Positions 45,222 to 60,156 of a stretch of 64,000 bases of DNA are shown here, piece after piece. The notes below the pieces were generated by a model, which was not told where the DNA came from, did no database searches, and saw nothing but the letters and a program-made list of their open reading frames with translations. The position numbers and the translations under genes are program-made. The stretch is from the IMG/VR virus record IMGVR_UViG_3300009177_000028, positions 62,001 to 126,000 of that record. One strand, 5' to 3'. Within the stretch, counting starts at the first letter, position 1. Every line of letters starts with the position of its first letter.

Positions 45222-47651
45222 TTATGGTGTTAGACCGCTAGCGCCGTTCCACTGCAAATATATTCCGTTTTGTAAATGGATAAAACGTGGACAACCATTA
45301 TCTATTCCAGTAGTAACGGCACCACCGGTTGACATAACGCCGGTACCGCTTGTACATCCTGTAAATTGGGTTGCATTAGTGCCAGTATAGTTTACTAAAG
45401 AAACTCCGGTACTGGTAGTTACATAAATAGAACCGCTAGTAGGAAAGCCCGTAGTAGAAACAACGTTGATCGTTGCTTGCGGAAGTGTTGCTCCGTTAGA
45501 ACCAGATGCAATTGTTGTTGCTCCAACAAAAACTCCATTGCCCGTAGAGCCATTTAAAGTGAAAGTGGTGCTATTAATGACAGTAATAACCCAGGTTCCA
45601 TTAGCGGCGGTATTACCTAGTACCCCAGAAATAGTTACTACCTGACCAGTAACTAAAGCATTAGCTACGCCGGTAGTTATTTGAATGGGAGAAGCATTGG
45701 TTGCAGCGGTAATGGTACGTGTAGTAACTTCTTCTGTGCTTAAAGTAAAGGTACCAAAATTAGTTCTACCATTTCTTGTAATAGGAGCGAGGCCCATGAA
45801 TCTTTGATTATATGCAAATGGTGGATTAGAACCGGCTGTTAATGCAATTTCTGTAGCGATCCCTCCCCATATTTCTACCGGTAATATTTCGGTTGTTCCA
45901 GTAAATGGAGAATCTCCAGCATTAGCAGATAATAATGGATTAGTCGCTGAAGTTCCATCTAAATTAGCCCAACTACTTAAAGCACAAAAATCTGGTATTC
46001 CATTTTTAAAGGTAAACCCTACATTATTTGTTACTCCAGTTCTTAATATAATTGCGCCGAAATCGGTGTTTGGGGCGCCTGCGTAGCAGAATAATCTCTC
46101 TACATTTAAAGTTGGTAGTGGTGTTGGTTCACTATCTGGAAGTCCAAACATAATAAATCCATTATTAGTGCCGCCTAATGTTCTGGTGTATACGACAACA
46201 TACTGTCCAGACGATTCTGCTGCCATCGTAATACGACTGGCAGTAGTAGGGTGACCTCCACCTGTAATTAGGTTGCCGTAAGCGGTAGTTACTAAAGGAT
46301 CAATATCAAAAAACAAAGCTACATGATTGTGCGACCCACCGACTATAAAATCTCCATAACCATCAGCATTAAATCCTGTTGTAATAGAAACTAGTGGTAA
46401 AGATGAAATTGTTGGTTCAACAGCTAATCTAACTTGCCAGCCAATTGAGTGTGGACTTTGAAGAGTAATCCTGCTAACCTGAGTGACGCTGTCACCTGGA
46501 TACCCAGAAATTCTAACGCTACCGCCACCACCATATGTACCATTTCCGGTAGACCCGTTTAGTGCAAACGTGCTAGCAGTAAGTGGAGTCACGGTCCAAA
46601 CACCATTAGCTGCTGTGTTGCCAGTAATTCCAGAAATGACAACTTTTTGACCAACAGAGTAAGATGGATTTGGAGTAATTACAATTGGGCTAGCATTAGT
46701 TGCACCAGTAATTGTAAAAGAGTTATTCACAAAAGTTGACATAAAATTGGAGGCGGTTGTTTCAATTTCATACAACCACCAATTAATTGAATTGATAGTT
46801 TCAACTGGAGGGTTTTCGGTTGATCGGTAATCAAGAACATATCTATTTAGATTGCTAACTGCTCCACCTGTGGACATAGTTCCAGACCCGCCAGAGCACC
46901 CTGTAAATTGAGTAGCGTTAGTATTAGTGTAAGTAACTGCAAATGAGCCGGTGCTAGTTGTTACGAAGATAGTTCCACTGGTTGGGAAACCAGTAGTAGA
47001 TACTACGTTGATGGTAGATTGTGGCAAAGATTGACCGTTAGATCCTGAAGCGATAGTAGTGTTATTACCAACGTTAATAGCTGTAATTTTAAAGCAACCA
47101 GAATTTTTTGTTGGAAATGAAGTACTTTTCATCACAAACATTTTGCCAACGTCACCTGCAACAACTTTTCTTTTCTGTATTGGAATAGAAACTTCTTTTT
47201 CTACACCCGCTCCAAAATTGATACCAGTACCATATCCATCTGTAGTTAATCCAGATGTATAGAACATTCCTGTGCTTACCGTACCGCCAGTAGTAAAAGC
47301 TCCATTGCCAGCAGATCCTGATAGTGTGAATGTGTTGGCGCCAGTTACGTCAATTACCCAAGTTCCGTTTGCGGCTGTATTTCCGCCTACGCTTGCAAGA
47401 AAAACTGACTGCCTATTAGCTAAACCATGGGCCGTAGAGGTTGTAATTTGAATTGGCGTAGTATTACTAGCGGCAGTAACGGTTAAAGAATTTGCTACTG
47501 TATCTAGATTCCATCCCATGCTACCTACGATGGAATACCCTAGGACCCTGTACAAAAAGATAGACAATTCATACAAGAGTGGCGTATGGAATTTGCTGGT
47601 AGCATATCCGGTATTCGCTGCATTGTAATCTCTTGAAACAAATATTGTCAT
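45222..47651 (-). CDS. Virion-type scaffold protein class B3 with five plug-in modules
   Basis: B scaffold (RDY, SIFL.RVL, DVGK..V.KS...NSG.F, VLDYR, RITLQSPHS.GWQVR, GDSPFT..TE.LP, GRTNFG, HLQNGIY..W.G) with 3 module Y and 2 module X. Confidence 0.72.
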   Translation of the reverse strand: MTIFVSRDYNAANTGYATSKFHTPLLYELSIFLYRVLGYSIVGSMGWNLDTVANSLTVTAASNTTPIQITTSTAHGLANRQSVFLASVGGNTAANGTWVIDVTGANTFTLSGSAGNGAFTTGGTVSTGMFYTSGLTTDGYGTGINFGAGVEKEVSIPIQKRKVVAGDVGKMFVMKSTSFPTKNSGCFKITAINVGNNTTIASGSNGQSLPQSTINVVSTTGFPTSGTIFVTTSTGSFAVTYTNTNATQFTGCSGGSGTMSTGGAVSNLNRYVLDYRSTENPPVETINSINWWLYEIETTASNFMSTFVNNSFTITGATNASPIVITPNPSYSVGQKVVISGITGNTAANGVWTVTPLTASTFALNGSTGNGTYGGGGSVRISGYPGDSVTQVSRITLQSPHSIGWQVRLAVEPTISSLPLVSITTGFNADGYGDFIVGGSHNHVALFFDIDPLVTTAYGNLITGGGHPTTASRITMAAESSGQYVVVYTRTLGGTNNGFIMFGLPDSEPTPLPTLNVERLFCYAGAPNTDFGAIILRTGVTNNVGFTFKNGIPDFCALSSWANLDGTSATNPLLSANAGDSPFTGTTEILPVEIWGGIATEIALTAGSNPPFAYNQRFMGLAPITRNGRTNFGTFTLSTEEVTTRTITAATNASPIQITTGVANALVTGQVVTISGVLGNTAANGTWVITVINSTTFTLNGSTGNGVFVGATTIASGSNGATLPQATINVVSTTGFPTSGSIYVTTSTGVSLVNYTGTNATQFTGCTSGTGVMSTGGAVTTGIDNGCPRFIHLQNGIYLQWNGASGLTP

Positions 47652-48938
47652 TTAGGTGCCTAAAGGTAGAAGATTGTACGGCATTATAGATCCATCCCAG
47701 GGCCATAATACACCGTTACCTACGTGTATAAATTCTCCATTATCACCCACTAAATGAAAGTTGGGAACGTTGGTGCTCGTGAATGCTATTCTAGTTAATT
47801 TGGCTCTAGCTAAAGAGTATTGGCCAGCGGTAGAAATTGAAGATATTAATGCGTCTGAATAAATTATTTTACCGGTTCTAATTTGTGTTCCTAAAAGACC
47901 TGATAAATTTGGACCAACAGTGTACAGCGTCCCGGTAACACCATCTCCAACGAAATTTTTAGTCATTAATTGGCAAGTTCTAGTGGTCCCATCGAACCCG
48001 GCCATAGCAAAACTAGTGCTATGAGAGTCGGTACCTACAGCGGCTGTTAAATTATTACCGCCAACCATCATGGTTAGTGGGTTCGTATCTTGCGCTTGAG
48101 TATAGAACCTTTGAGGAACAAGCACATAGAAATATAGCCCTGCTGCTGCGTTAGAATTTGGAGATCTAATGTGTCCTAGAAGAAAATCAGTATCACCTAT
48201 TAGCGTGATATTGCCTATATTTCCCGCAGTGGTTCCAGTGAAATTGACTGTTGAGGCGGTAACTCTTTCAGTGATGGTGGTACCTGTAAAGGCGCTGCCA
48301 GTCCAAGTGCCCGGTGGAGATCCAACTACCCCAAACTGTCCGAATGGAGTGGAAGAGCCTCTTAGCAACATTTGAAATTGACTGCTGGCTTGGCCCGTGT
48401 TGACGCCAGAGGCGCCCGATAAAGTTCCTACCCAATAATTACCGCTAGCAATGCCTAACTGAGAAGCTGCGACGACATCTATTACTCTATAGTTGAGAGC
48501 TGAACGAGAAGTTAAATTATTTTTAAGTGTAGTAATATCTCTTGTCCCGCCACTAAATACGGATAGTTGTAATTGAGTTTGTGTTGGCACCCCGATAATT
48601 CTATAAATAGAATTATCTGTGCTATCTGGATCAGTGGTAGACCAAATAGTGATGTGCTTACCAATCATTGTTGAGTTAAAGTTGGCGGATGGAGAATTAA
48701 AATTAATTCCAAGATCCGAAGTTACCCCATCACTGCCTGTTGCCAATACCGAAGCACCTTCAAAAAAACCGGCTGGCGCGCTAGTTGGTGTGGCGGGCAT
48801 TCCACCTGGAGTGGTTAGAGAGGATGTTCCATTTATACAATATCCCCAGAACTCATAACAAATTCTTAGGAAGATAGGAATGTCCCTTCCATTAGTTCCT
48901 GTAATATACTGTAATGCTCTTAGATATTTTCTAGCCAT
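47652..48938 (-). CDS. Virion-type scaffold protein class A3 (no plug-in modules)
   Basis: A scaffold: YEFWGYCINGT, INYRV.D, NTGQASSQ, GQYSLAR.KL, GEFIH.GNG..WPWDG. Confidence 0.72.
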   Translation of the reverse strand: MARKYLRALQYITGTNGRDIPIFLRICYEFWGYCINGTSSLTTPGGMPATPTSAPAGFFEGASVLATGSDGVTSDLGINFNSPSANFNSTMIGKHITIWSTTDPDSTDNSIYRIIGVPTQTQLQLSVFSGGTRDITTLKNNLTSRSALNYRVIDVVAASQLGIASGNYWVGTLSGASGVNTGQASSQFQMLLRGSSTPFGQFGVVGSPPGTWTGSAFTGTTITERVTASTVNFTGTTAGNIGNITLIGDTDFLLGHIRSPNSNAAAGLYFYVLVPQRFYTQAQDTNPLTMMVGGNNLTAAVGTDSHSTSFAMAGFDGTTRTCQLMTKNFVGDGVTGTLYTVGPNLSGLLGTQIRTGKIIYSDALISSISTAGQYSLARAKLTRIAFTSTNVPNFHLVGDNGEFIHVGNGVLWPWDGSIMPYNLLPLGT

Positions 48939-48947
48939 ATTATTCCT

Positions 48948-49517
48948 TTATTGAATCCATCGCCCTACAATAGTTATATTGTCTAATGAATTGGTGCTTG
49001 GGGCGGTCTTATATACATCATTTTCCACATTTGGCGGATTACGATTAGGATCAAATAACTCTGGTCGACCAGTAATATTCTCAACAATAACCCAAGTTTC
49101 ATATTGTTGTGTTGATGTATTATATCCTCTAAGTTTGTAATAGATCCTTTGATCTTTTGGATGATCAATAACGGAATCAATGTCTACATCTTCTTCTGAA
49201 CGATTTTCAAGAAGTTGAATGCCTGCAAAATTAGTTGTGTATCCTGCATATGGTGAATTAACAAAGCTAGCAACAACAATGAAAGAGTTTTCAGTGGCGG
49301 CAAAATTAGTTGTGTATCCTGCATACGGAGAGTTATTAAAAAATGCAAGTGTACTTTGCATATCAAAACCTCCCCAATTAAGAAAATTTCCTTGGAAACG
49401 CCCATCTGTAAAATGTAAATTAACAACAGTAGTGTACCCATCCCACTTCGCTACAGATCCGAAATCGGGCGTATCCAACATTATTTGTGTTGCTGATAAA
49501 ATTTGACCTACTGCCAT
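48948..49517 (-). CDS. Small virion-type protein, class C, with internal 25-aa duplication
   Basis: NSPYAGYTTNFA twice; IYYKLRGYNTSTQQYETW...SLDNITIVGRW. Confidence 0.7.
   Translation of the reverse strand: MAVGQILSATQIMLDTPDFGSVAKWDGYTTVVNLHFTDGRFQGNFLNWGGFDMQSTLAFFNNSPYAGYTTNFAATENSFIVVASFVNSPYAGYTTNFAGIQLLENRSEEDVDIDSVIDHPKDQRIYYKLRGYNTSTQQYETWVIVENITGRPELFDPNRNPPNVENDVYKTAPSTNSLDNITIVGRWIQ
49225..49325. repeat. Perfect 26-nt direct repeat, 75-nt period
   Basis: GCAAAATTAGTTGTGTATCCTGCATA at 49225-49250 and 49300-49325. Confidence 0.9.
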
Positions 49518-49526
49518 TGATTATCC

Positions 49527-51806
49527 TTATGGTACTACCGCTGGCCCATTCCAAGGTATGTAGATTCCTCTTCTCATATGTTGAAAAGATGATCCTCTTA
49601 ATACTGTTCCGCCAGCGGTAAAAGCTCCATTTCCAGTCGTTCCATTTAATGTAAACTGAGTATTGTTAATCACTGTAACTACGAAAGTTCCATTGGCTGC
49701 CGTATTTCCACCAACTCCACTAATTGCCACCGTTTGACCGGTTACCAGCGTATTAGTAGCGGTAGTTGTGATTTGAATTGGAGAAACTCCATTTCCACTA
49801 GTAGTTGAAACGCTCCAGCTTGCCGAGTCAGTTGTCAATGTATAATCACCAAAATTAGTTCTTCCATTCTTGATGAATGGAAGCGTGCCCATTGCCTTAG
49901 GATAAAACGGATAGCTAATTGAGTTTGTAATATCGTGCCAAGTATTTACTACGCCAGCCACCAAATCGACTGGTAAAAGTTCGGTTGATGAAGTAAATGG
50001 AGAGTCTCCGGCCGAGCCATCAAACATTGGGCTAGCTCCCTGTACAACACCACTTAAATAAGTTAGAGAGGATGGAGAGCAAGAAATAGGTACCCACTTA
50101 AATGCCGCTCCCTGAATAGAGACAGTAACATAATGTCCAACAAACAAACTTACATCGTTAGTTCTTCCATTTCCTAAGTTGTTACTAGCCCCATTACCTA
50201 ATGCATATAGTCTTTCAACATTATCCAATGGGAGTGGCGCTGGCTCATTATCCGGAATTCCAAAGGTCAAATAAAATGATGGGGGAGAACCTGCATTCAG
50301 TGGCCTTCTGGCAAAAATATGAAAACTTTGTCCAGTGTCATCTCCAATTAGCGTCATTCTAAATTGTGGGCCTGCACCAGCATTATCACCACATCCCGTA
50401 GAAGTATTGAAGAGGGCGCTAGAAGTATCGTAATACAATGCGCCATGCAAATGTCGACCACCTACTGGAAAATCTCCGGCAGAGTTTCCAGCAAACCCAG
50501 GGGCGAATGTTATTAAAGCTGTGTTAAAATTGCTGTTAGAATCTGTAGCAGTTTCATTGCAAATTCTTACTTGGTACCCCGTAGAATGTGGGCTTTGTAA
50601 TATGATTCTTGGAGTAGTTGATGTTCCGTAACCACGATAACCAGTTCCACCGTTATTGGCGCCCTGTGTTGGACAATTAATATCTTTATCATAAAGATAC
50701 CATGGAACTGTATCAGTATTTTCTACTAGTGCTAAATCGCCATTTCCTCTATAATCTACTACAAATTTGTTTTGATTATAGATTGGCTCACCAGTAGCTA
50801 ATGTGCCGGTGCCACTGGAACAACCTGTAAATGCGATCTGAGTAACCGCTCCACCAGTAGACATAGTTCCTGTTCCACCGGAACAACCAGTGAACTGCGT
50901 ACCACCAGACGTGCTGGTGTAAGTCACCGTTTGGGCACCTGCGCTCGTGGTAACTGTAATGGTTCCGCTGCCCAAGAATCCAGCAGTAGAGGCAACGTTA
51001 ATAGTGCCTTGTGGAAGAACTTGTCCGTTTGAACCGGCAGCAATAGTTGTGCTAGCATTCTGTGTTCCGGTATAGTTAATTGTTTGAATATTATTGCTTG
51101 AAAAAACCGTGCCACCAGTAAACATAGATCCGGCACCGCCTGTACACCCAGTGAATTGAGTACCAGCGTTTAATCCTGTATAAGTGATTGTTTGACTTCC
51201 TGTTGTTGACAATAAAATTATTGATCCTGAATTTGGGAACCCCGTGGTAGAGGCTACGTTAATGGTGCCAGTTGGTAGCGCTACGCCATTGGAGCCAGAT
51301 GCAACGGTGGTGTTAGGTCCAGCAAAAAAACTTCCGCTGGCTGGAAATCCAGAAACTGAAGCTGCATAAATGGTTGCCGTAGGTAAAGATACAGCATTCG
51401 AGCCCGCTGCTACGGTTGTAGTATTACCTTGCTGCAATGCGGTAATTAAAAACAATCCAGAGTTTCTATAAGGATAAAGGGGGCTTTTAAGAACTAAAAT
51501 TCTGCCGATATCAGCAGAGATAACCCCTCTAACAGAAACTGGTATTGAAACTTCAATTGCAGCGCCGTTGTTAGCAATACCGGCTTTATTACCTACTGGG
51601 AAAGTTGGAGTATTAGCCGTGGGTGTAGTGTCGCCTGTTGCAAATAATAATTGTCCAACAGCGTTTATGTTATAATTAGTATCTCCAACATATGTGAAAC
51701 TCAAAATTCTTCTTAAGAAAATAGATGACACATAGGAATTAATCCATGGCCTATTTCCTGTAGTTACGTTTTGTGTGAGATAATCTCGGCAAAGATGAAC
51801 AACCAT
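49527..51806 (-). CDS. Virion-type scaffold protein class B2 with three nested module X and one module Y
   Basis: B scaffold closely paralogous to 53400-54851 (VGDTNYNIN, RI.LQSPHSTG.QVRIC, GDDTGQ, NEPAPLP, QGASPMFD, QH.RRG.YIPW.GP). Confidence 0.72.
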   Translation of the reverse strand: MVVHLCRDYLTQNVTTGNRPWINSYVSSIFLRRILSFTYVGDTNYNINAVGQLLFATGDTTPTANTPTFPVGNKAGIANNGAAIEVSIPVSVRGVISADIGRILVLKSPLYPYRNSGLFLITALQQGNTTTVAAGSNAVSLPTATIYAASVSGFPASGSFFAGPNTTVASGSNGVALPTGTINVASTTGFPNSGSIILLSTTGSQTITYTGLNAGTQFTGCTGGAGSMFTGGTVFSSNNIQTINYTGTQNASTTIAAGSNGQVLPQGTINVASTAGFLGSGTITVTTSAGAQTVTYTSTSGGTQFTGCSGGTGTMSTGGAVTQIAFTGCSSGTGTLATGEPIYNQNKFVVDYRGNGDLALVENTDTVPWYLYDKDINCPTQGANNGGTGYRGYGTSTTPRIILQSPHSTGYQVRICNETATDSNSNFNTALITFAPGFAGNSAGDFPVGGRHLHGALYYDTSSALFNTSTGCGDNAGAGPQFRMTLIGDDTGQSFHIFARRPLNAGSPPSFYLTFGIPDNEPAPLPLDNVERLYALGNGASNNLGNGRTNDVSLFVGHYVTVSIQGAAFKWVPISCSPSSLTYLSGVVQGASPMFDGSAGDSPFTSSTELLPVDLVAGVVNTWHDITNSISYPFYPKAMGTLPFIKNGRTNFGDYTLTTDSASWSVSTTSGNGVSPIQITTTATNTLVTGQTVAISGVGGNTAANGTFVVTVINNTQFTLNGTTGNGAFTAGGTVLRGSSFQHMRRGIYIPWNGPAVVP

Positions 51807-53145
51807 ATTAAAACCTTTAGAATGGAAACAGTGTGTACGGTAAAACGGTTTTATCCCAAGGTAATGCAGCTCCCTGAGATATTAATATAAAGTCTCCGTT
51901 TGAACTAAACCTAGTAAATTGTGGCATAAACACGTTAGCAAATCTTGCATTTCTCAATCTCACTCTAGCTAGTGAATATTGGCCGACAACTCCTGGCAGG
52001 GTTAAGAATCCTGGTGAATTAAGTAGATTTCCAGTGAACGGATTGGCCCCAGCCCTAAAATCACTTAAAGAATTGCCTGGAGGATTAGCTATATTGGGAA
52101 CAGTAGAACTAGCATTTCCATCTCCAATTAATGCTTTCACTGACGTTCTATATCCTCTAGCAACACCATCCGCTGCCTTCATTACAAATCCACCACCGTA
52201 TCCGGTACTAGTACTTGTTGTAGTAAATTGGGGAGAGACGTTGCCTCCTTGTATTTCTATTGCAATTGGATTAAGATCTTGAGATTGAGCATATAACCTA
52301 TCAGGTATTTCCATGTGGATATGAAATCCGCTACCATTAGGATTTCCAGTATCTTTGCTGTGGCATATTATATAGCTTCTATCGCCCCACATATTAATGG
52401 ACATAGTTCCGCTCGACCCGCCTGCGTTTGTTAAAGCTGGTCCCGTTACAACTCCTGTGCCATCAGTGAATGCTGAGCCGTTCCAGGTCCCACCAGGAGA
52501 AATATTGTAATTCCATCTACCTGTTGGGATACCACCACCCTGATCATTCATAATAATTTGTATTTGAGAGGTGGCTTGACCAGCATTTATACCCGTTGGA
52601 TCAAACTGGAAAACAAGATAGTTACCATTATTTGTTGCTCCTGATGTTTTACCAGCATCTCCCATATCAACTACTCTATAGTTAATTGATGATCTAGAAG
52701 TAAATGATGGTTTATATCCATCTGGTGGGCTCGGGGTACCACCATTATTTACATTAATAACAATATTATTAGTTGACTTAAAAGCTATTATATTATAAAT
52801 CGAATCTTCTGTACTATTAGATCCAGGTTTCCAAGTTACTAGTTGTTTACCAACCATATTAGAGGTAAATGGAATAGTAGAAGCCGAAAAGAAATCACTA
52901 TAACCGTCAGTTCTAAATATTGTTGTTGGATTAGTATATCCATCAGAGCCCATTGCATTGATTCTGTTACTAGTTACGTTGTTTCCAGTAGACATGGTAC
53001 CCGTTCCACCAGTACATCCAGTAAATTGGGTGCCAGCATTTAAACCAGTATAAGCAACGGTCTGCGTTCCAGTGCTCGTATATACGAAAATGGTTCCGCT
53101 GGTTGGAAAGTTAGTAGTAGAGGCAACGTTAATAGTGCCTTGTGG
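50985..53145. repeat. Identical 30-nt segment shared by module X copies in two genes
   Basis: AGTAGAGGCAACGTTAATAGTGCCTTGTGG at 50985-51014 and 53116-53145. Confidence 0.85.
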
Positions 53146-53385
53146 TAAAGAGACTCCGTTTGAACCTGCCGCAATAGTAGTTGCTATTCCAGTAAAATTT
53201 GCCGGAAAATTAGATGGTGTAGTAGAGGCGAACCCACCTGGAGTGTTAAGTGATGAAGTTCCATTACAGCAGAATCCAAAAAACTCATACATAAATTTAA
53301 AAGCAAAGACCGGCCCGGCCCCGGAATTGCCTCCGCCAACAATGCCGCCCGTAAATATAAGACCTCTTACAAATTTATTTGCCAT
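51817..53385 (-). CDS. Virion-type scaffold protein class A2 with one module X
   Basis: YEFFGFCCNGT, VGK.LV.WKP.SNS.EDSIY, INYRVVDM, GQYSLARVRL, GDFI.I.QG..LPWD. Confidence 0.72.
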   Translation of the reverse strand: MANKFVRGLIFTGGIVGGGNSGAGPVFAFKFMYEFFGFCCNGTSSLNTPGGFASTTPSNFPANFTGIATTIAAGSNGVSLPQGTINVASTTNFPTSGTIFVYTSTGTQTVAYTGLNAGTQFTGCTGGTGTMSTGNNVTSNRINAMGSDGYTNPTTIFRTDGYSDFFSASTIPFTSNMVGKQLVTWKPGSNSTEDSIYNIIAFKSTNNIVINVNNGGTPSPPDGYKPSFTSRSSINYRVVDMGDAGKTSGATNNGNYLVFQFDPTGINAGQATSQIQIIMNDQGGGIPTGRWNYNISPGGTWNGSAFTDGTGVVTGPALTNAGGSSGTMSINMWGDRSYIICHSKDTGNPNGSGFHIHMEIPDRLYAQSQDLNPIAIEIQGGNVSPQFTTTSTSTGYGGGFVMKAADGVARGYRTSVKALIGDGNASSTVPNIANPPGNSLSDFRAGANPFTGNLLNSPGFLTLPGVVGQYSLARVRLRNARFANVFMPQFTRFSSNGDFILISQGAALPWDKTVLPYTLFPF

Positions 53386-53399
53386 TCACTTCTCCAAAA

Positions 53400-54851
53400 T
53401 TATGGTATGATATTAGGCCCAGCCCAAGGGATATACAAGCCTCTTCTTAAATGCTGATAAGCTCTTCCATTTTCTGTAGTCGGAGAAAAATCTCCAAAGT
53501 TAGTTCTCCCTGAGCGGAGATGTGGAATAGTTCCCATTGGTCTTGGTGAATAAGGATACACTTGAACAGTTTGGTTTCCATATGATGAAAGAGTTCCTTG
53601 TACCAAGTCTATTGGTAATAATTCTGTTGCATTGGTAAATGGGGAGTCCCCTCCGTTGCTGTCAAACATCGGACTTGCTCCTTGCGCAACTCCCGTTACA
53701 TAGGTCCAAAAAGAGGCTGCAAGTTGAACTGGGACACCGAAAGTTGTCGCACTCATTCCTTGGGCGGCGCCTCGTGATAAGAAGAAGCTATTAGCTGGGG
53801 AACCTAACATTTGAAATAAAGCCCCATCATTAACTGATCTACTACCGAAACCATCGTCTCCAGTAAAACCTGAACCTAACACAAATAATCTGGCTACAGT
53901 GTTAACTGGTAATGGCGCTGGCTCATTTTCAGCCAATCCAAAAGTTACAATATTAGAGTCTGGTTGGGTTGCATTACCGGGACGCCTACCATATACGGTA
54001 ACCCCTTGTCCAGTGTCATCTCCTACCATGGTTATTCTAAATTGAACTCCAGAAGTTCCTCCGTCCCCAAATCCAGGAGCACCTCCGAGATAAATTGTAC
54101 TACTACTATTAAACCACATTGGAGCATGGAAGTGTTGTCCGAATGCCGGAAAATCTCCTGCGGCTGTTCCACCAAATCCTGGAGCAACAGTCATACGAGG
54201 ACAATTTCTATTGCTAAGGTTACTGGCATAAGAGCCGCTTCCCTCATTACAAATTCTTACTTGCCATCCTGTAGAGTGTGGACTTTGAAGAACAATTCTT
54301 GGAGTATTAGAAGTAAGATCACTTAAATATTCAGCGCTTGTTTTAGTATTGCTACCACCGCTAGTTGGACAGTTTAGATCTTTTTCATATATGTACCAAG
54401 CAATACTATCGGCAGCTTCTACTGGAGGAGGATCTCCTAAAGTTCTATAATCAATAACATAAGAATTTGTACTAGTTTCAAATCCAAGAATCAAAAAAAT
54501 TCCTGAATTATAGCGTGGAAAAGCTGTACTTCTAAGTACCAATAATCTACCGATATCAGCAGAAGTTACTGTTCTTACAGATACAGGAATAGAAACATAA
54601 AATTCTTTTTGTGCTCCCAAGTTAATTCCAGCTTTGCTGCCCGTTGCAAAAGTAGGCGTTCCCGTGGGAGTAGAATCACCAGTCGCAATTAATAAAGTGC
54701 CTATAGAATTAATATTGTAGTTAGTATCACCAACATAAGAATATAACAACACTCTTCTTAGAAAGATACTTAACAAGTAAGTATAAATAAACTCTCTATT
54801 TGAGTTTGTAATATTTTGTGTTTGATAGTCTCTGAGTAAATGTATCGCCAT
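53400..54851 (-). CDS. Virion-type scaffold protein class B1 (no plug-in modules)
   Basis: Minimal B scaffold, 483 aa; aligns by eye with B2 and B3 across its length. Confidence 0.72.
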   Translation of the reverse strand: MAIHLLRDYQTQNITNSNREFIYTYLLSIFLRRVLLYSYVGDTNYNINSIGTLLIATGDSTPTGTPTFATGSKAGINLGAQKEFYVSIPVSVRTVTSADIGRLLVLRSTAFPRYNSGIFLILGFETSTNSYVIDYRTLGDPPPVEAADSIAWYIYEKDLNCPTSGGSNTKTSAEYLSDLTSNTPRIVLQSPHSTGWQVRICNEGSGSYASNLSNRNCPRMTVAPGFGGTAAGDFPAFGQHFHAPMWFNSSSTIYLGGAPGFGDGGTSGVQFRITMVGDDTGQGVTVYGRRPGNATQPDSNIVTFGLAENEPAPLPVNTVARLFVLGSGFTGDDGFGSRSVNDGALFQMLGSPANSFFLSRGAAQGMSATTFGVPVQLAASFWTYVTGVAQGASPMFDSNGGDSPFTNATELLPIDLVQGTLSSYGNQTVQVYPYSPRPMGTIPHLRSGRTNFGDFSPTTENGRAYQHLRRGLYIPWAGPNIIP

Positions 54852-54860
54852 ATTTCCTCG

Positions 54861-56411
54861 TTAGGCTCCGTAGAATAGAATTTGGTTTACATAAATGGTA
54901 TTATCCCAAGGCCAGCAAATTCCATTTTGTAATTGGATAAATTCTCCATTTAATCCGATTCTATGATTCTTTGGTACGTGTGTTCCGGTAAATTTTACTG
55001 TTCTTAATTTAACTCTAGCCAACTGATATTGATTTGTAACTCCGGGAAGACACAATAGTCCATCTGAAATCGGAATTGTACCAGCAGTTGTATTATAACC
55101 AATTTTATAATCAGTTAAGTTTTGTCCGAAAACGTCAGGGGTACCATCACCTCTTAAAGCTTTAACTAAAGTTCTATAAGATCTTGCTGTCGTGGAGTCT
55201 CCAGAATGGGTGCGCATGACAAATCCACCACCATAGCTTGCAGTAGTGCTTGAAGTATATACGCTGCCAGTGTTAAATGTGTGACCCATAAAAGCTACGG
55301 GATGAAGATCTGCTCCTTGAGGATATAATCTTGTTGGAATTTCAAAGTGAAAACTGCTGTGTAAATTAGCTTGAAACAAATCTTGCTCTCTAATATGAGC
55401 AATTAGAAATGTTTTATCTCCAATCATAGTTACCGCAGTTTGTCCACTAGTATATGCTTGACTGGTATTTGGGTTATAACTAAACAGACATTGATAACCA
55501 TCATTCTGGAATCCGTTATAAACAGTTCCACTGTTTGCGGTATAAGTGCCGTTACCTGTAGAGCCAGTCAATGTAAATGTAGTAGATCCAGTTACAGTCA
55601 CGAGCCATTGGCCGTTAGCCGCAGTATTACCTAAAGCTCCAACAATATTAACGGTTTGAGCGGTTGTGAAGTTATGAGGTGAAGCTGTAGTGCATGCTAT
55701 CGGGGAGGCGTTGGTTGCAGCAGTAATTGTTAAAGGTACACCTGACCAAGAGCCGGTTCCTGAAATGCCGACTCCTAGGGTGGCGCTGGTGTTTGTGCCA
55801 AGATTAGCTATTTGAATCTGTGAATTTGCTTGTCCAGGGTTAATGCTTGGAGCATCAGTTTGCAGGATCATAAAATTTCCATTGCCAGCCGATGTTGCTA
55901 AGGCATCTGATCCCGTTTCCATATCTACAACCCTATAAACAACACCAGAACGTGCATTCATAGAAGGGTGTTTGGTAGTCGGGTTAGGAAACCCTCCAGT
56001 ATTGATATTAACAATAATTTGATTGCTAGAAACAACCCTACTAATTATATACATAGAGTCTTCAGAACTATTAGAATTTGGCACCCACATGACTAGCATT
56101 TTACCAGCCATAGTTGGGCTAAAAGGCGCTGATGAAGTAGTGGTAAATAAGCAATCTCCGCTAACTAAATCTCCGCTGACTGCAACATGTGATCCATCAG
56201 TGCCTGAAGCCATTAAACTGGTTCCACCAGTAAAATTGGTAGGAAGAACGGTGCCGTTATTAGATGCAAATCCGCCAGGAATTGTTGGGGAAGCGGTTCC
56301 GTTAATACAAAACCCCCAAAATTCATACGTCCATTTCATTCTCCAAGCAACACCTCTGCCTCCGGCGTTTGCGTTGGGATAGACCATTCCTCGAATAAAT
56401 TTCATACCCAT
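54861..56411 (-). CDS. Virion-type scaffold protein class A1 with one module Y
   Basis: YEFWGFCINGT, YRVVDM, INPGQANSQ, NQYQLARVKL, GEFIQLQNG.CWPWD. Confidence 0.72.
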   Translation of the reverse strand: MGMKFIRGMVYPNANAGGRGVAWRMKWTYEFWGFCINGTASPTIPGGFASNNGTVLPTNFTGGTSLMASGTDGSHVAVSGDLVSGDCLFTTTSSAPFSPTMAGKMLVMWVPNSNSSEDSMYIISRVVSSNQIIVNINTGGFPNPTTKHPSMNARSGVVYRVVDMETGSDALATSAGNGNFMILQTDAPSINPGQANSQIQIANLGTNTSATLGVGISGTGSWSGVPLTITAATNASPIACTTASPHNFTTAQTVNIVGALGNTAANGQWLVTVTGSTTFTLTGSTGNGTYTANSGTVYNGFQNDGYQCLFSYNPNTSQAYTSGQTAVTMIGDKTFLIAHIREQDLFQANLHSSFHFEIPTRLYPQGADLHPVAFMGHTFNTGSVYTSSTTASYGGGFVMRTHSGDSTTARSYRTLVKALRGDGTPDVFGQNLTDYKIGYNTTAGTIPISDGLLCLPGVTNQYQLARVKLRTVKFTGTHVPKNHRIGLNGEFIQLQNGICWPWDNTIYVNQILFYGA

Positions 56412-56456: not shown

Positions 56457-57965
56457 TTACGAGTACCAAGTATCTAAAACTTCTGGAATAGAATATGGGC
56501 CGCCGCATGGGAAAGCTGGCGCATTTGCTAATGAAATTTGCGTATCTACCCAAACAACAGCCTGCGGAGGATCGCATGAAGTATCATACGCTCTTAATTT
56601 ATAATATTGGGTTAAAGTGGATAAGTTTAGTGGTAGAGTGCCGGTTCGATAAATTGTTTTAAAATAGTCCAAAGATCTAACAACATTGGCAATTCTCAAA
56701 TCTTGCACACTAAAATTAGCTTCTTCTTTAGTTGGTGAAGAGGTAACTAAATAAAGCGGGGTAGCTCCGATTACCAAAGCGCCCGGATTTGCACTAGTTG
56801 CGGTAAAAATTAATCTTGTATTAGCTGCCGGAATAACAGTTGAGTTGCTAAAAACTGTAGTTTTTCCGCCAGCAGCGCTTTGAATGCCGATTGAAACTGT
56901 GTTACTTGATGTTGATGTAGTATATAAGGTTTCAAATGTAGTTGACCCTTCAAAAAATTTAATTTCTGCATTAAGGGTGCCACCGGCCAATGAATTCATA
57001 CGCCATTCAATTACAAAAGTTCTGTTGGGGGAAGATCCCACTGTTGTGGTAAAAATTCCCAAACCAGTTCCGCTAGTGGTTGTGTCTCTTTCACAAACGT
57101 TAATGGTTGCCCCAAGTGAGGAGTTTGGTAAGCTAAAATTAAATGCATTTGTAGCTTGTCCGAATTCCACGAACCCATTTGATGAAGCATTAACAGAAGT
57201 ATATGTTATTCCCCATACGGTTACTGGAAATGGTAAAGCAACAGTAGTCATTACTTCATCGCCATGGTTTCCAATATCTGTTACACCAGAAACATAAGTT
57301 CCAGTAGAAGATGTAATGGCGTAACTAACGTCATTATAAAGTACATAAGGCCCCGGCATAGTCGTGCTTTGTAACTGGGCGGCACCGTTGTAAGTTAATA
57401 GTAAACATCCATTTAGATAAGATCTCATGGCGGTCCCATCATGCGTAAACCCTATGTGACACCATTGATGTAATGGAATCGGGAAATCGGTAACTGTTTT
57501 ACTTGTTTGTGCAGTTGGTGAGGTAGCACATCCAAAATAAACATCTTGCCCGCTGTTACCAGAACCATTAGAGACTTCCCAAGAAAAGAATGGGGCAGCC
57601 CATGTATTTGTTGTTGTGTGCTGTCTAAATAGTTTTTTAACGAATTGTTGAAAATTACTATTATTAAGATAGCTTCGTAAATTAACCCAAAATGAAATAG
57701 TAAATGGTGGTTGTGTATTTATATTTTCTGCACCAAAAATATAGTTTCTGGTGGCCGAAGCGCCAGAAGGATAGTTACCAGCTCCAGGGAAATATGGGCA
57801 GTTACCACCAAATACCCCCGTGCCTGTTCTGATTATTGTACCACTAACAGATAGATCCGTAGACGCACTTCCGGCTAATATACTTCCGGTGTTTTTGTAA
57901 ACTCCAGAGGTCTCATCTAGAAGCCATACGTAGCCATCATTTGTATCGGGTGGTATTCTTGCCAT
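56457..57965 (-). CDS. LamG-domain virion-type protein with inserted NIDO-like domain and class C tail
   Basis: FTISFWVNL...WCHIGFTHDG..MRSYLNG...VQDLRIANVVR. Insert ALPFPVTVWGITY.SV.ASSNG...GSSPNRTFVIEW. Tail YYKLRAYD. Confidence 0.7.
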   Translation of the reverse strand: MARIPPDTNDGYVWLLDETSGVYKNTGSILAGSASTDLSVSGTIIRTGTGVFGGNCPYFPGAGNYPSGASATRNYIFGAENINTQPPFTISFWVNLRSYLNNSNFQQFVKKLFRQHTTTNTWAAPFFSWEVSNGSGNSGQDVYFGCATSPTAQTSKTVTDFPIPLHQWCHIGFTHDGTAMRSYLNGCLLLTYNGAAQLQSTTMPGPYVLYNDVSYAITSSTGTYVSGVTDIGNHGDEVMTTVALPFPVTVWGITYTSVNASSNGFVEFGQATNAFNFSLPNSSLGATINVCERDTTTSGTGLGIFTTTVGSSPNRTFVIEWRMNSLAGGTLNAEIKFFEGSTTFETLYTTSTSSNTVSIGIQSAAGGKTTVFSNSTVIPAANTRLIFTATSANPGALVIGATPLYLVTSSPTKEEANFSVQDLRIANVVRSLDYFKTIYRTGTLPLNLSTLTQYYKLRAYDTSCDPPQAVVWVDTQISLANAPAFPCGGPYSIPEVLDTWYS

Positions 57966-57975
57966 ATATTTTTAG

Positions 57976-59439
57976 TTAGGTTACGCTAACTACTCCCATT
58001 TGAATAAATTGTCCATCGTATGGTTGAACAGGATTGGTTATTCCTGATATACTGTAAGGCGGATTAGCGCCAGAGTTTCTAATTTCTACGCTATCAATAG
58101 ATAAAGCGGTTAGCGTAATAGTTGCGCCCCCATTCATTTGAATAATTTTAGTATAATCTATCGGGTAAACTACAGTTTGTCCCGATGTTCCTCTATTAAG
58201 ATAAAAAGTTTGGGCCGGGCTGGACACGTCTAACTGATAAATATTCCAGTTATCAGCAGCCGGAGTGCCTCCTGTCTGGAAATATGCTCCATCATTAGTT
58301 CCACCAGTATAGGTTTTTTGTTCAATTACCCCTCTAAATCGTAACGTAACATTATATAGTGTCACGGTAGATCCTGGAAGAACAGTAGAAACGGTAGTAG
58401 AGGCGGTGGTAGAACAGGCCACACTATTAACATTTCCGGTGTTAGGTAATAACCAAGTTAATCCATTTAAAGCATCAGTAACAGTTGTTGGTGTACTATT
58501 TTGAAATCCTAGGACTCCCCATTTTTCTAATACTTCAATGGGGCCTAAAGTAGCAAGAGTGCCACAGGGTATAGTTGCTCCAGTATAATTAATGCCGGTA
58601 GAAACCCAATAAATTGGGGAGGGAGGCGAGCAAGCATTATCATAAGCTCTTAATTTATAATATGTGGTAAAAGGGATCCCAGATCCTGAAGTTGTCATTG
58701 CTTGTCTATAGATATTTTGAAAATATGACTGTGGACGAGCAACGTTGGCTATTCTGATATCACATATAGAGCTGGCGCACTCTTCAGGGTTACCTGATCC
58801 GGATGGAATTGCTCCAAAAAACCATGGACCATGAGTACCGTAGTTAATAGCTCCGGTTGCCGCTGTTTGCCCAACCAAATTACCATTTAAATATCCATAT
58901 TGAAATGATCCATCATATACTAATCCTATATGACACCATTGATTTAGTGGAATATTATTATTTGCGTCTAACACCATTCCACCACCCGTCGCAGTTGCCG
59001 CAAACAAGTCGAAGGCGGTAGGCTGACTGGTATACTGTCTTGTTTGCAAACCTATTTGTCCAAATACTGAGGACCAGTTTCCGGCTGTATGTTGTTTGGT
59101 AAATGGGTGTTGTGTAAAACCCGTAGTATTATAGTTTCTAAGATAATACCAAAAAGAGAAAGTAACAGGAGATTGCGGCTCAACGTTATTGGCGCCAGAA
59201 ATAAAATTGCGCGGAGAGCCGCTATTATTTGCTGTAAATGTGACGCAGGTGTTTGCACCCATAGATGAGAACGGGCTTGGTTGCTGAAAATTTGCTATTC
59301 CTGAGAATGTAGCTAAATCAGAAACTGCATGTGAAATAGCAGATGGAGATGTAGACGAATTAATAAATGGGGCTGCCGTCTCATCTAGTTTCCATACTAC
59401 AATATCATTATTATCAGGATCAACTCTAATACCTGTCAT
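57976..59439 (-). CDS. LamG-domain virion-type protein with class C motif and extra C-terminal domain
   Basis: VTFSFWYYL...WCHIGLVYDG...YLNG...CDIRIANVARP..YF, then YYKLRAYDN. Confidence 0.7.
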   Translation of the reverse strand: MTGIRVDPDNNDIVVWKLDETAAPFINSSTSPSAISHAVSDLATFSGIANFQQPSPFSSMGANTCVTFTANNSGSPRNFISGANNVEPQSPVTFSFWYYLRNYNTTGFTQHPFTKQHTAGNWSSVFGQIGLQTRQYTSQPTAFDLFAATATGGGMVLDANNNIPLNQWCHIGLVYDGSFQYGYLNGNLVGQTAATGAINYGTHGPWFFGAIPSGSGNPEECASSICDIRIANVARPQSYFQNIYRQAMTTSGSGIPFTTYYKLRAYDNACSPPSPIYWVSTGINYTGATIPCGTLATLGPIEVLEKWGVLGFQNSTPTTVTDALNGLTWLLPNTGNVNSVACSTTASTTVSTVLPGSTVTLYNVTLRFRGVIEQKTYTGGTNDGAYFQTGGTPAADNWNIYQLDVSSPAQTFYLNRGTSGQTVVYPIDYTKIIQMNGGATITLTALSIDSVEIRNSGANPPYSISGITNPVQPYDGQFIQMGVVSVT

Positions 59440-59445
59440 TTGTCC

Positions 59446-60156
59446 TCAAGTCTGAAATCCATTATGGTAAATATTAGCAAAATATGATTGTGGTCTAACA
59501 ACATTGGCTACTCTAATATCTTGAACCATAACCGGGGAGCCTTGCACCGTGCTAGATCCGGGAACACAACCAACATACCATTGTCCCCTATTACCCAATG
59601 TGCCATAATCAATGGTTCCAGAAAAATTACTAGAAACAACTAACCCGCCATTTATATACATTCTAAGTGTAGTGCCATCCCAAGTTCCGCCAATATGACA
59701 CCACCTACCAACTGGCAGATAATTATTTGTAGATGGCGTTCTTACGAACTGTAAAGTTCCATTAAGGGTAATATACAAATCTAATTGTCCATCACTTGTG
59801 TTGAGTAATTGAAATCCAAATGTTAAAAAGGGGCTTGACAAACCATTCAAAAAATACTGTTTATTAAAAATTTCAGCAAAATAGTTAGTATATCTTCTTA
59901 AGAAAACCCATCCAGATAAGCTAATGTTGGGGGTAACTAATACATCATTATCTCCACCGGCCCCATCATGATTTGATGAAATATAAGATGATGGAATGTA
60001 AATACAGTCACCTAGCAACCCCTGTGCTCCAGAGATTGGGTTACCATAATCTGTCCAATCTGCTGAGGCTGCTGTTCCGGTATTGGTATGAGTACCAGGA
60101 CCATCATTCAGAAATAAGACAAGAACATCATTTGCATCTGGGTCTACTCTAGCCAT
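59446..60156 (-). CDS. Single LamG-domain virion-type protein
   Basis: ISLSGWVFL...WCHIGGTWDGTTLRMYING...VQDIRVANVVRPQSYF. N-terminus RVDPD.ND is shared with its two neighbours. Confidence 0.75.
   Translation of the reverse strand: MARVDPDANDVLVLFLNDGPGTHTNTGTAASADWTDYGNPISGAQGLLGDCIYIPSSYISSNHDGAGGDNDVLVTPNISLSGWVFLRRYTNYFAEIFNKQYFLNGLSSPFLTFGFQLLNTSDGQLDLYITLNGTLQFVRTPSTNNYLPVGRWCHIGGTWDGTTLRMYINGGLVVSSNFSGTIDYGTLGNRGQWYVGCVPGSSTVQGSPVMVQDIRVANVVRPQSYFANIYHNGFQT

What the first reader, a model, noticed from the sequence alone, without database searches (positions are those of the whole stretch)
50790..51420. Matryoshka domain: module X inserted twice inside another copy of itself
In B2 one X copy is cut into three ordered pieces: TTVAAGSNAVSLPTATIYAASVSGFPASGSFFAG, then IQTINYTG, then IAFTGCSSGTGTLATG. 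A complete X copy sits in each gap. The reading frame and piece order are preserved, implying insertion into two hairpin loops to give a branched rather than beads-on-a-string structure. Each copy keeps one Cys (FTGC).
Basis: seen in the sequence. Interest (0 to 1): 0.65.

Follow-up and report, generated by a model that had tools for sequence, protein, structure and literature searches.

The report
Self-nested beta-barrel module, phage fibre protein
A tail-fibre-like protein of a huge soil phage carries a ~72-residue beta-barrel module with two more complete copies of the same module inserted into two of its loops, and relatives nest this module up to four levels deep, so it is a natural example of recursive domain insertion.

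Summary
In the 759-aa ORF window 49527-51806(-) ("B2"), residues 128-163, 240-247 and 324-344 together make one copy of a ~72-aa module X. Complete X copies fill the two gaps (164-239, 248-323). An HMM built without the split copy finds its pieces in the right order. The joined pieces score 59.9 bits as one domain, against at most 6.3 for shuffles. AlphaFold2 (pLDDT 88) gives the pieces the same strand series as the whole copies, and both gaps fall in predicted loops. I could not inspect coordinates, so the 3D identity of the split copy is inferred.

It is not an assembly artefact. An independent groundwater contig is collinear with 0 gaps, and 18 of 19 variant positions are synonymous.

X is a small beta-barrel of the phage decoration-domain class with no Pfam model. 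It occurs in about 2,300 protein clusters. The nest sits in one loop of a core that resembles the JBD30 lateral tail-fibre proteins (Z 16.8).

Self-nesting is a family habit: 82 of 120 homologues have it, at four recurrent loops, and P0010 is a true four-level doll. The likely role is branched surface display on a fibre, but this was not tested. I rate it a new variant of a known kind; SBHM nests in RNA polymerase are the nearest precedent.

The parts
49527..51806 (-). B2 gene, 759 aa (P0001): host protein that carries the nest
   Evidence: ORF list and translation. 583 homologues. AF2 pLDDT 86.7, pTM 0.82. The core matches JBD30 baseplate chain 8rk3_c, Z 16.8, 256 of 317 residues aligned.
51318..51425 (-). 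Outer X copy, piece 1 (aa 128-163): beta1, 3-10 turn, beta2, beta3
   Evidence: HMM positions 2-35, i-E 2.3e-8. Strands E129-132, E145-148 and E158-162. pLDDT about 88-91 in the nest-only model.
51090..51317 (-). Inner X copy 1 (aa 164-239), inserted in the beta3-beta4 hairpin of the outer copy
   Evidence: Full-length HMM hit, 130 bits. Barrel fold matches at Z 7-8.3.
51066..51089 (-). Outer X copy, piece 2 (aa 240-247, IQTINYTG): beta4
   Evidence: HMM positions 39-50 in the right order. Predicted strand E241-245. Contiguous with piece 3 in most relatives.
50838..51065 (-). Inner X copy 2 (aa 248-323), inserted in the beta5-beta6 loop of the outer copy
   Evidence: Full-length HMM hit, 121 bits. 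Sister to the copy at the same position in orthologue P0013, with weak support (0.57). Barrel matches at Z 7.5-7.7.
50775..50837 (-). Outer X copy, piece 3 (aa 324-344): beta6, FTGC/Gly-rich loop, beta7
   Evidence: HMM positions 56-74, i-E 0.0055. Strands E324-327 and E341-343.
49587..49832 (-). Second, unrelated inserted barrel Y (aa 659-740), E1 FCCH-like, near the C-terminus of B2
   Evidence: Pfam PF16190, E 5e-5, 23.7 bits, below the cut-off of 29.5. Structural match to E1 FCCH, Z 11.4, rmsd 1.8. Absent from paralogue B1.
52963..53187 (-). Single uninterrupted X copy in neighbouring gene A2 (aa 67-141 of the 522-aa ORF 51817-53385)
   Evidence: HMM hit of 135 bits. Groups with B2 inner copy 1 in the copy tree, support 0.88.
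46851..47066 (-). Single uninterrupted X copy in paralogue B3 (aa 196-267 of the 809-aa ORF 45222-47651), in the same host loop as the B2 nest
   Evidence: HMM hit of 100 bits. BLAST of B1 against B3 places it between B1 residues about 132 and 129-158.
45309..45521 (-). Second X copy in B3 (aa 711-781), near the C-terminus
   Evidence: HMM hit of 87 bits.
53400..54851 (-). B1, 483 aa: paralogue with the bare host loop (no X, no Y)
   Evidence: The host-site segment is 18 aa here against 235 aa in B2.

Best explanation
B2 is a structural, tail-fibre-type protein of a huge contractile-tailed phage. One surface loop of its conserved core (between about residues 125 and 345) carries a ~72-residue beta-barrel module, X.

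That X copy has itself received two further complete X copies. One sits in its beta3-beta4 hairpin and one in its beta5-beta6 loop. The chain leaves the outer barrel, builds a whole inner barrel, returns for one strand, leaves again for a second inner barrel, and returns to finish the outer barrel. The product is a three-barrel branched cluster on a single stalk.

The arrangement arose by in-frame insertion of module-coding DNA into loop-coding positions. The hairpin-1 split is old and is shared by a whole clade of orthologues. The second-loop insert is shared with orthologue P0013. Nest composition then varies quickly among related phages.

X can be inserted because it is itself a loop-insertion domain: its two ends must lie close together. 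It also tolerates interruption at four recurrent loops.

The likely role is outward-facing, multivalent display (adhesion or decoration) on a lateral fibre or baseplate-periphery protein.

Shown: the sequence architecture, its reality in nature, purifying selection, the predicted secondary structure, the fold class, and the family-wide recurrence. Inferred: the 3D assembly of the split barrel, the fibre location, and the binding function.
For: Sequence architecture and controls.

Structure prediction. AF2 of the full protein gives pLDDT 86.7 and pTM 0.82. AF2 of the nest alone (aa 118-352) gives pLDDT 88.4 and pTM 0.70 with no segment below 50. In both, the split copy has the same strand series as the whole copies, and both gaps lie between strands.

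Fold class. Both inner copies match small six-stranded barrels used as phage decoration or insertion domains: Mystique tail tube 9n71_B Z 8.3, JBD30 hub 8rk3_o Z 7.7, GP4 8jov_1 Z 7.7, P22 I-domain Z 6.0.

Host. The core matches JBD30 baseplate chain 8rk3_c at Z 16.8 over 256 of 317 residues, far above the next unrelated rows. JBD30 lateral fibres are gp47/gp48 heterodimers (PMC11445458).

Context. Neighbours are three LamG-domain proteins, FCCH-bearing paralogues and three tandem A-B gene pairs. The same synteny is seen in an independent contig. The genome also has a Baseplate_J ORF above the Pfam cut-off and a sheath-like ORF just below it (29.2 against 31.4 bits).

Reality in nature. A 6,515-bp contig from an independent groundwater study is collinear over window 49300-52300 with 8 substitutions and 0 gaps, and contigs from other studies bridge individual junctions. 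DNA copies are only 63-84% identical over 69 nt or less. 18 of 19 variant positions are synonymous.

Family habit. The insert at the host site is quantised at 18, ~90, ~161, ~226 and ~300-314 aa. 82 of 120 listed homologues are nested, and insertion points cluster at HMM positions ~19, ~26-27, ~34-43 and ~51-52. Complementarity of N- and C-pieces is 59 of 92 within 3 positions, against a mean of 19 (maximum 34) in shuffled pairings. All outer copies form one clade, support 0.94. About 20 of 143 unrelated X-bearing proteins also show clean X-in-X nests.
Against: No coordinates were available to me, so the outer barrel was never superimposed on the inner ones.

Piece 2 alone is too short to be significant, and pLDDT dips to 55-76 around it.

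Fold matches of X have Z of 8.3 or less, which the tool notes can reflect only a common arrangement.

The host assignment rests on one structural match without sequence support.

The A-B heterodimer test gave no verdict.

No binding or virion-location data exist, and the phage is uncultured.
Confidence: 0.8

Rival explanations
1. Beads on a string with decayed repeats. The three 'outer' pieces are leftovers of partly deleted tandem copies. They now serve only as linkers between two folded X barrels, and no discontinuous domain exists.
For: Truncated X variants lacking the first strand (x', starting at HMM ~9-20) are common in relatives. Piece 2 is only 8 residues and is not significant alone. 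pLDDT is lowest around it.
Against: The pieces are non-overlapping, ordered, and together cover HMM positions 2-74, with breaks only at predicted loops. All core residues are kept, including the FTGC and Gly-rich motif. The outer copies form a conserved orthologous clade at 45-69% whole-protein identity. N/C-piece complementarity across the family far exceeds shuffled pairings. AF2 places confident strands in all three pieces.
Confidence: 0.08
2. Assembly or repeat-collapse artefact. The nested order was created by mis-joining reads from separate X copies.
For: The genome is a short-read metagenome assembly. No long reads were available among the runs found.
Against: One contig from a different study and habitat is collinear across the whole gene with 0 gaps and its own SNPs, and contigs from three further studies bridge the junctions. 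The copies share no long exact DNA words, being 63-84% identical over 69 nt or less. The frame stays open. 18 of 19 variants are synonymous. Orthologue P0013 in a syntenic contig has the same second-loop insert.
Confidence: 0.02
3. Alternative packing. The pieces do fold, but not as a self-contained outer barrel. They might complement strands of the inner copies, or of a neighbouring subunit, by strand or domain swapping. The unit would then be a fused multi-barrel body, not a clean doll.
For: Truncated x' copies in relatives must obtain a missing strand from somewhere. Fibre proteins are oligomeric. I could not check contacts in the models.
Against: The inner copies are complete and need no extra strand. 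The AF2 strand pattern of the pieces mirrors that of a normal X. The lambda gpJ HDIV domain with its inserted sandwich aligns over model residues 14-214, which is compatible with a barrel that has an insert (PMC10721106).
Confidence: 0.1

Closest known systems
SBHM (sandwich-barrel hybrid motif) nests in the Si3 insertion of cyanobacterial RNA polymerase
   Same: Repeats of one small beta-domain family are not simply tandem. Several copies (SBHM-2 to -5) are built from distant parts of the chain because other copies lie inside them, and the whole array is itself an insertion in a host loop (PMC10895346).
   Different: The fold, protein and biology are unrelated: the transcription trigger loop rather than a phage fibre. 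Here the copies are much more alike (50-74% identity). The nesting is polymorphic among close relatives, uses four defined loops, and reaches four clean levels. The Foldseek hit to 8emb was noise-level, probability 0.01.
E1 FCCH-like barrels that decorate siphophage tail tubes (PF16190 class)
   Same: A six-stranded closed beta-barrel that faces outward on phage tail proteins (PMC13576161). The best structural hit of X is a domain (residues 104-179) of the phage Mystique tail-tube protein, Z 8.3. Module Y of B2 is a true FCCH-like barrel, Z 11.4.
   Different: X gives no Pfam hit at E of 1 or less, and profile-profile comparison of X against Y gives probability 0.3%. Self-nesting has not been described for FCCH barrels in the papers I read.
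JBD30 gp47/gp48 tail-fibre-forming proteins (host core only)
   Same: The B2 core aligns with a 317-residue JBD30 baseplate chain at Z 16.8. As in JBD30, two distantly similar gene families sit side by side, and here there are three pairs. JBD30 arms contain three heterodimers.
   Different: There is no sequence similarity. Which JBD30 protein chain c is was not verified. JBD30 proteins carry no X or Y inserts. JBD30 is a siphophage, whereas this genome has a Baseplate_J gene and a sheath-like ORF. Heterodimer formation is untested.
Insertion domains in phage structural proteins (P22 coat I-domain; beta-sandwich inside lambda gpJ HDIV)
   Same: Small beta-domains are dropped into loops of a structural core. 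P22 I-domain Z 6.0; gpJ 375-591 aligns over the nest, Z 7.2 (PMC10721106).
   Different: Those are single, heterologous insertions, not a module inserted into copies of itself.

Membership tests
Nested same-family domain insertion (discontinuous parent domain) | Parent-domain pieces are ordered, non-overlapping and jointly complete | tested here: met
   HMM positions 2-35, 39-50 and 56-74 in order. Joined score 59.9 bits as one domain, against 41.5 or less for other orders and 6.3 or less for shuffles.
Nested same-family domain insertion (discontinuous parent domain) | The inserts are complete, independently recognisable copies of the same family | tested here: met
   130-bit and 121-bit full-length hits. 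Both give the same barrel matches.
Nested same-family domain insertion (discontinuous parent domain) | Insertion points lie in loops of the parent fold | tested here: met
   DSSP of the AF2 models places the gaps between beta3 and beta4 and between beta5 and beta6. These are predictions, not experiment.
Nested same-family domain insertion (discontinuous parent domain) | The parent pieces pack into one domain superimposable on the inserts in 3D | not testable with these tools
   Model coordinates are not exposed, and an edited (joined) sequence may not be folded. Only strand pattern and pLDDT support it.
Pfam PF16190 E1_FCCH (for module X) | Sequence match to the family profile | tested here: not met
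   No hit over aa 128-344 at E of 1 or less. X profile against Y profile by hhalign gives probability 0.3%.
Pfam PF16190 E1_FCCH (for module Y, aa 659-740) | Sequence match above the gathering score, and the FCCH fold | tested here: inconclusive
   23.7 bits against a cut-off of 29.5. The fold match is strong: Z 11.4, rmsd 1.8 over 77 residues. Paralogue B3's copy passes at 45.1 bits.
Small six-stranded beta-barrel decoration domains of phage tails and capsids (for X) | Structural similarity over the whole domain | tested here: inconclusive
   Z 6-8.3, rmsd 2.2-2.8 over 66-74 residues, for both inner copies. The tool warns that Z below 8 may reflect only a common arrangement.
JBD30 gp47/gp48-like tail-fibre-forming proteins (for the B core) | Shared fold over most of the chain | tested here: met
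   8rk3_c Z 16.8, 256 of 317 residues aligned, model range 4-753. Foldseek 8rk3_G and 8rk3_K give TM by target of 0.46 and 0.41.
JBD30 gp47/gp48-like tail-fibre-forming proteins (for the B core) | Heterodimer with a paralogous partner encoded next door | tested here: inconclusive
   Three tandem A-B gene pairs. Complex prediction of A3 with B1 returned no verdict.
JBD30 gp47/gp48-like tail-fibre-forming proteins (for the B core) | Detectable sequence homology | tested here: not met
   A profile of 71 B-family sequences against all PDB chains gave nothing relevant. No PHROG or Pfam hit for the core.

The most novel reading that the evidence does not exclude
X is a naturally recursive building block: a barrel that tolerates whole copies of itself in at least four of its loops. 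Huge phages would then grow tree-like (dendritic) multi-barrel arrays of variable depth (one to four levels) and branching from a single loop of a fibre protein. They would reshuffle these arrays quickly between related phages, as a way of tuning reach or valency of host binding. If so, it is the clearest natural case of fractal domain architecture and a ready-made scaffold for domain-insertion engineering.
Probability: 0.4. Interest if true: 0.75.

Novelty: new variant of a known kind. Interest (0 to 1): 0.6.

Why it matters
Same-family domain nesting is rare; RNA polymerase SBHM arrays are the example I could document here.

This case has four useful properties:
- The module is short and highly conserved.
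- It nests in itself at four defined loops.
- It does so in two loops at once (this window) or four levels deep (P0010).
- It shows many intermediate forms in closely related phages: 0, 1, 2, 3 and 4 units at one host site.

That makes it a natural series for asking which loops of a barrel tolerate whole-domain insertion, how discontinuous domains fold, and how modular adhesins evolve in phage host-recognition proteins.

It also defines an unannotated domain family, with about 2,300 cluster representatives and no Pfam model. Linear domain annotators will mis-parse it as fragments.

Tried and rejected
- Phage GenBank collection: megablast of the locus and tblastn of B2 found nothing.
- PHROGs: no family for B2, A2, B1, A1 or most neighbours.
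- Pfam: nothing for X.
- Sequence search of a B-family profile against PDB: nothing relevant.
- Foldseek of the full model against PDB: only FCCH hits for the C-terminal module and weak JBD30 rows. The Si3 SBHM hit had probability 0.01 and is not evidence.
- ESM Atlas feature search of one X, and Atlas and BFVD shape searches of the nest: only unnamed viral proteins and multi-barrel cyanophage structural proteins, TM below 0.5, not decisive.
- Profile-profile comparison of X against the FCCH-like module Y: no relationship detectable.
- Cluster look-up for names of NCBI-sourced homologues: none carry a name.
- Complex prediction of A3 with B1 (neighbouring genes): no verdict, so no evidence either way.
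- Literature searches for a prior description of self-nested phage barrels found none. This is a limited library, so absence is weak.
Full report
OBSERVATION

The three quoted pieces are at aa 130-163, 240-247 and 324-339. These map to nt 51318-51419, 51066-51089 and 50790-50837. The gaps, aa 164-239 and 248-323, each hold a complete copy of the same ~72-76-aa module X. FTGC occurs once per copy.

When the two inner copies are removed in silico, the joined outer copy aligns end to end with contiguous copies. Its only gaps are exactly at the two insertion points.

An HMM built without the outer copy finds its pieces in the right order around the two full hits:
- Piece 1: HMM 2-35, i-E 2.3e-8.
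- Piece 2: HMM 39-50, not significant alone.
- Piece 3: HMM 56-74, i-E 0.0055.

The joined copy scores 59.9 bits, and 59.7 as one domain. Any other piece order gives a best single domain of 41.5 bits or less. 200 shuffles give at most 6.3 bits. The outer copy is the most diverged, at 50-55% identity. The other five copies in the window are 59-74% identical to each other.

The 204-kb genome holds six X copies in three genes: B2 has three, neighbour A2 has one, and paralogue B3 has two.

NOT AN ARTEFACT

The runs that hold this DNA come from rhizosphere, soil and groundwater metagenomes of several studies. One groundwater contig of 6,515 bp, from a study other than the possible source, is collinear over window 49300-52300 with 8 substitutions and no gaps. 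Shorter contigs from three more studies bridge the individual junctions.

The DNA copies are only 63-84% identical over at most 69 nt, so k-mer mis-joins are unlikely.

Of 19 distinct variant positions within the gene, 18 are synonymous. Seven of them lie inside the nest. The frame is therefore under purifying selection in natural populations. No long reads were available.

STRUCTURE

AlphaFold2 of the whole protein, with 71 homologues, gives pLDDT 86.7 and pTM 0.82. The nest alone (aa 118-352, 37 homologous segments) gives pLDDT 88.4 and pTM 0.70, with nothing below 50.

In both models each whole copy shows the same series: beta1, a 3-10 turn, beta2, beta3, beta4, beta5, beta6, beta7. The outer pieces show the same series in the same order:
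- E129-132, a turn, E145-148 and E158-162 in piece 1.
- E241-245 in piece 2.
- E324-327 and E341-343 in piece 3.

The first gap is the beta3-beta4 hairpin turn. The second is the beta5-beta6 loop. Two strand traversals separate these loops, so they should lie at the same end of the barrel. This is a topological inference.

Coordinates are not exposed by the tools and edited sequences may not be folded. I therefore could not superimpose the outer barrel on the inner ones. This is the main untested step.

FOLD CLASS OF X

An exhaustive structural search with the nest model aligns both inner copies to small beta-barrels, with rmsd 2.2-2.8 over 66-74 residues:
- Residues 104-179 of the phage Mystique tail-tube protein, Z 8.3.
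- JBD30 hub residues 478-560, Z 7.7.
- Phage GP4 8jov_1, Z 7.7.
- VP1 capsid protein, Z 7.5.
- P22 I-domain, Z 6.0.
- Depolymerase accessory domains.
- The N-terminal barrels of F1/V1 ATPases and HerA.
- EF-Tu/IF2 domain II.

These Z values are middling, so I claim a fold class, not homology.

Lambda gpJ 375-591 is an HDIV domain with an inserted beta-sandwich (PMC10721106). It aligns over model residues 14-214, which is compatible with a barrel carrying an insert.

X has no Pfam hit. It is not detectably related to the FCCH-like module Y in the same protein; hhalign gives probability 0.3%.

A profile of 35 X copies finds 2,338 cluster representatives at E of 1e-3 or less, and 1,083 at 1e-10 or less. 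These proteins range from 250 to 3,300 aa.

HOST AND CONTEXT

Paralogue B1 (483 aa, window 53400-54851) has the bare loop: 18 aa where B2 has 235. B3 has one uninterrupted X in the same loop. Some homologues carry the FCCH-like Y barrel there instead. This loop is therefore an insertion hot spot.

B2 also carries a Y barrel near its C-terminus. Pfam PF16190 gives E 5e-5, below the cut-off. The structural match to E1 FCCH has Z 11.4.

The B core matches one JBD30 baseplate chain of 317 residues at Z 16.8, with 256 residues aligned. This is well clear of all other non-barrel rows. In JBD30 the lateral fibres are three gp47/gp48 heterodimers with similar folds (PMC11445458). That chain c is gp47 or gp48 is my inference from chain length and copy number.

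The window encodes three tandem pairs of two distantly similar families: A3-B1, A2-B2 and A1-B3. They are preceded by three LamG-domain proteins. The same order is found on an independent JGI contig whose B2 orthologue is P0013.

The genome is an IMG/VR record estimated 48% complete. It has a Baseplate_J ORF above the Pfam cut-off and a sheath-like ORF just below it (29.2 against 31.4 bits), both just upstream of the window. Relatives lie on contigs of 470-498 kb. Elsewhere the window has PhuZ-like tubulin, helicases, RNR and PhoH. This is a huge, probably contractile-tailed phage, and the A-B cluster is most likely a fibre or baseplate-periphery module.

A FAMILY HABIT

Of the 120 proteins parsed (116 listed homologues, including the window's own B2 as P0005, plus the four window proteins), 33 have no X, 9 have only whole copies, 78 have two levels, 2 have three levels and 2 have four levels. 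Insertion points cluster at HMM positions ~19, ~26-27, ~34-43 and ~51-52. All of these are between predicted strands.

Insert length at the B2 host site is quantised: 18, ~90, ~161, ~226 and ~300-314 aa.

P0010 is a true four-level doll, and each level is split in a different loop. This can be read directly from alignment A2.

P0013 shares the second-loop insert of B2. In P0050 an X sits inside a Y barrel.

In 92 configurations of the form N-piece, whole copies, C-piece, the C-piece resumes within 3 HMM positions of where the N-piece stopped in 59 cases. Shuffled pairings give a mean of 19.4 and a maximum of 34. The sequences are related, so this is not a probability, but four separate insertion classes each show it.

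In a tree of 84 copies:
- All split outer copies at this host site form one clade (SH-like support 0.94).
- The B2 outer copy pairs with the P0013 outer copy (support 0.55, weak).
- B2 inner copy 2 pairs with the P0013 copy at the same position (support 0.57, weak).
- B2 inner copy 1 groups with the X of the neighbouring gene A2 (support 0.88).

With only 75 columns, fine branching is weak. The picture is an old hairpin-1 split, later gains, losses and exchanges of units, and a nest that varies among otherwise syntenic phages.

Clean X-in-X nests also occur in about 20 of 143 unrelated X-bearing proteins.

MECHANISM AND FUNCTION

Shown: the architecture, its conservation and its polymorphism.

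Inferred:
1. X is insertion-competent because its ends are close; it always sits in short host loops.
2. Nests arise by in-frame illegitimate recombination of module DNA into loop codons, and selection keeps only the loop sites that still fold. The events are too old for DNA junction signatures.
3. The three-barrel cluster projects from the fibre protein and increases reach or valency of a surface interaction.

The high conservation of X (mean column identity 61%) hints at a conserved ligand or strict folding constraints. I cannot tell which. The single conserved Cys is replaced in some outer copies (P0013, P0015 and their group), so it is not essential.

COMPARISON AND VERDICT

The nearest documented precedent is the SBHM array of cyanobacterial RNA polymerase Si3, where several copies are discontinuous because others lie within them (PMC10895346). 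Outward-facing FCCH barrels on siphophage tail tubes are the nearest functional analogue (PMC13576161). I found no description of a phage barrel that nests in itself, but the library searched is limited.

I rate this a new variant of a known kind. Confidence is 0.8 that the nested reading is right and about 0.5 for the display function. Interest is 0.6.

The A3-B1 complex prediction gave no verdict and is listed only under Tried and rejected.

Noticed in passing
window 49215-49340 (ORF 48948-49517, minus strand, 189 aa): A 75-nt (25-aa) tandem repeat. Contigs from three other metagenomes carry one extra unit here: a joint at 49335->49300 with 39 nt between. This is a copy-number polymorphism in the small gene between B2 and A1.
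   Followed up: partly
window 45222-56411, minus strand: Three tandem pairs of two distantly similar families: A3-B1, A2-B2 and A1-B3. Each carries a different load of X and Y barrels. The same order is seen on JGI contig L001. It recalls the three gp47/gp48 heterodimers of a JBD30 fibre arm.
   Followed up: partly
P0010 (841 aa, homologue on a 12.6-kb Logan contig), aa ~134-424: A true four-level nest, X(X(X(X))). Each level is split in a different loop: hairpin beta3-beta4, before beta2, and beta5-beta6. P0115 also reaches four levels.
   Followed up: partly
P0050 aa ~394-547: An X copy is inserted inside an FCCH-like Y barrel (heterologous nesting). P0070 has the same two modules in plain tandem.
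   Followed up: partly
P0092, P0095, P0096, P0105, P0109 and others, aa ~125-205: The same host loop that holds the X nest in B2 holds a single FCCH-like Y barrel in these homologues. The loop is a general insertion hot spot.
   Followed up: partly
homologues P0007-P0038 and P0047-P0094: Common truncated X variants (x') lack the first strand, starting at HMM ~9-20, and sit beside or inside whole copies. How they complete a barrel is unexplained.
   Followed up: no
window 14927-16288 (+): ORF with a weak PhuZ-type phage tubulin match (E 1.1e-7). Next to it are helicases, DnaB, RNR and PhoH.
   Followed up: no
window 61540-63999 (+) and 56457-60156 (-): An 820-aa (3'-open) protein with an ice-binding-type beta-roll (PF21300), and three paralogous LamG-domain proteins, flank the A-B cluster. 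Both are conserved in L001.
   Followed up: no
G000 whole record: IMG/VR linear record, CheckV completeness 48%. Relatives lie on 470-498-kb contigs, so the true genome is probably 0.4-0.5 Mb. A Baseplate_J ORF (1,370 aa) and a sheath-like ORF lie just upstream of the window.
   Followed up: partly
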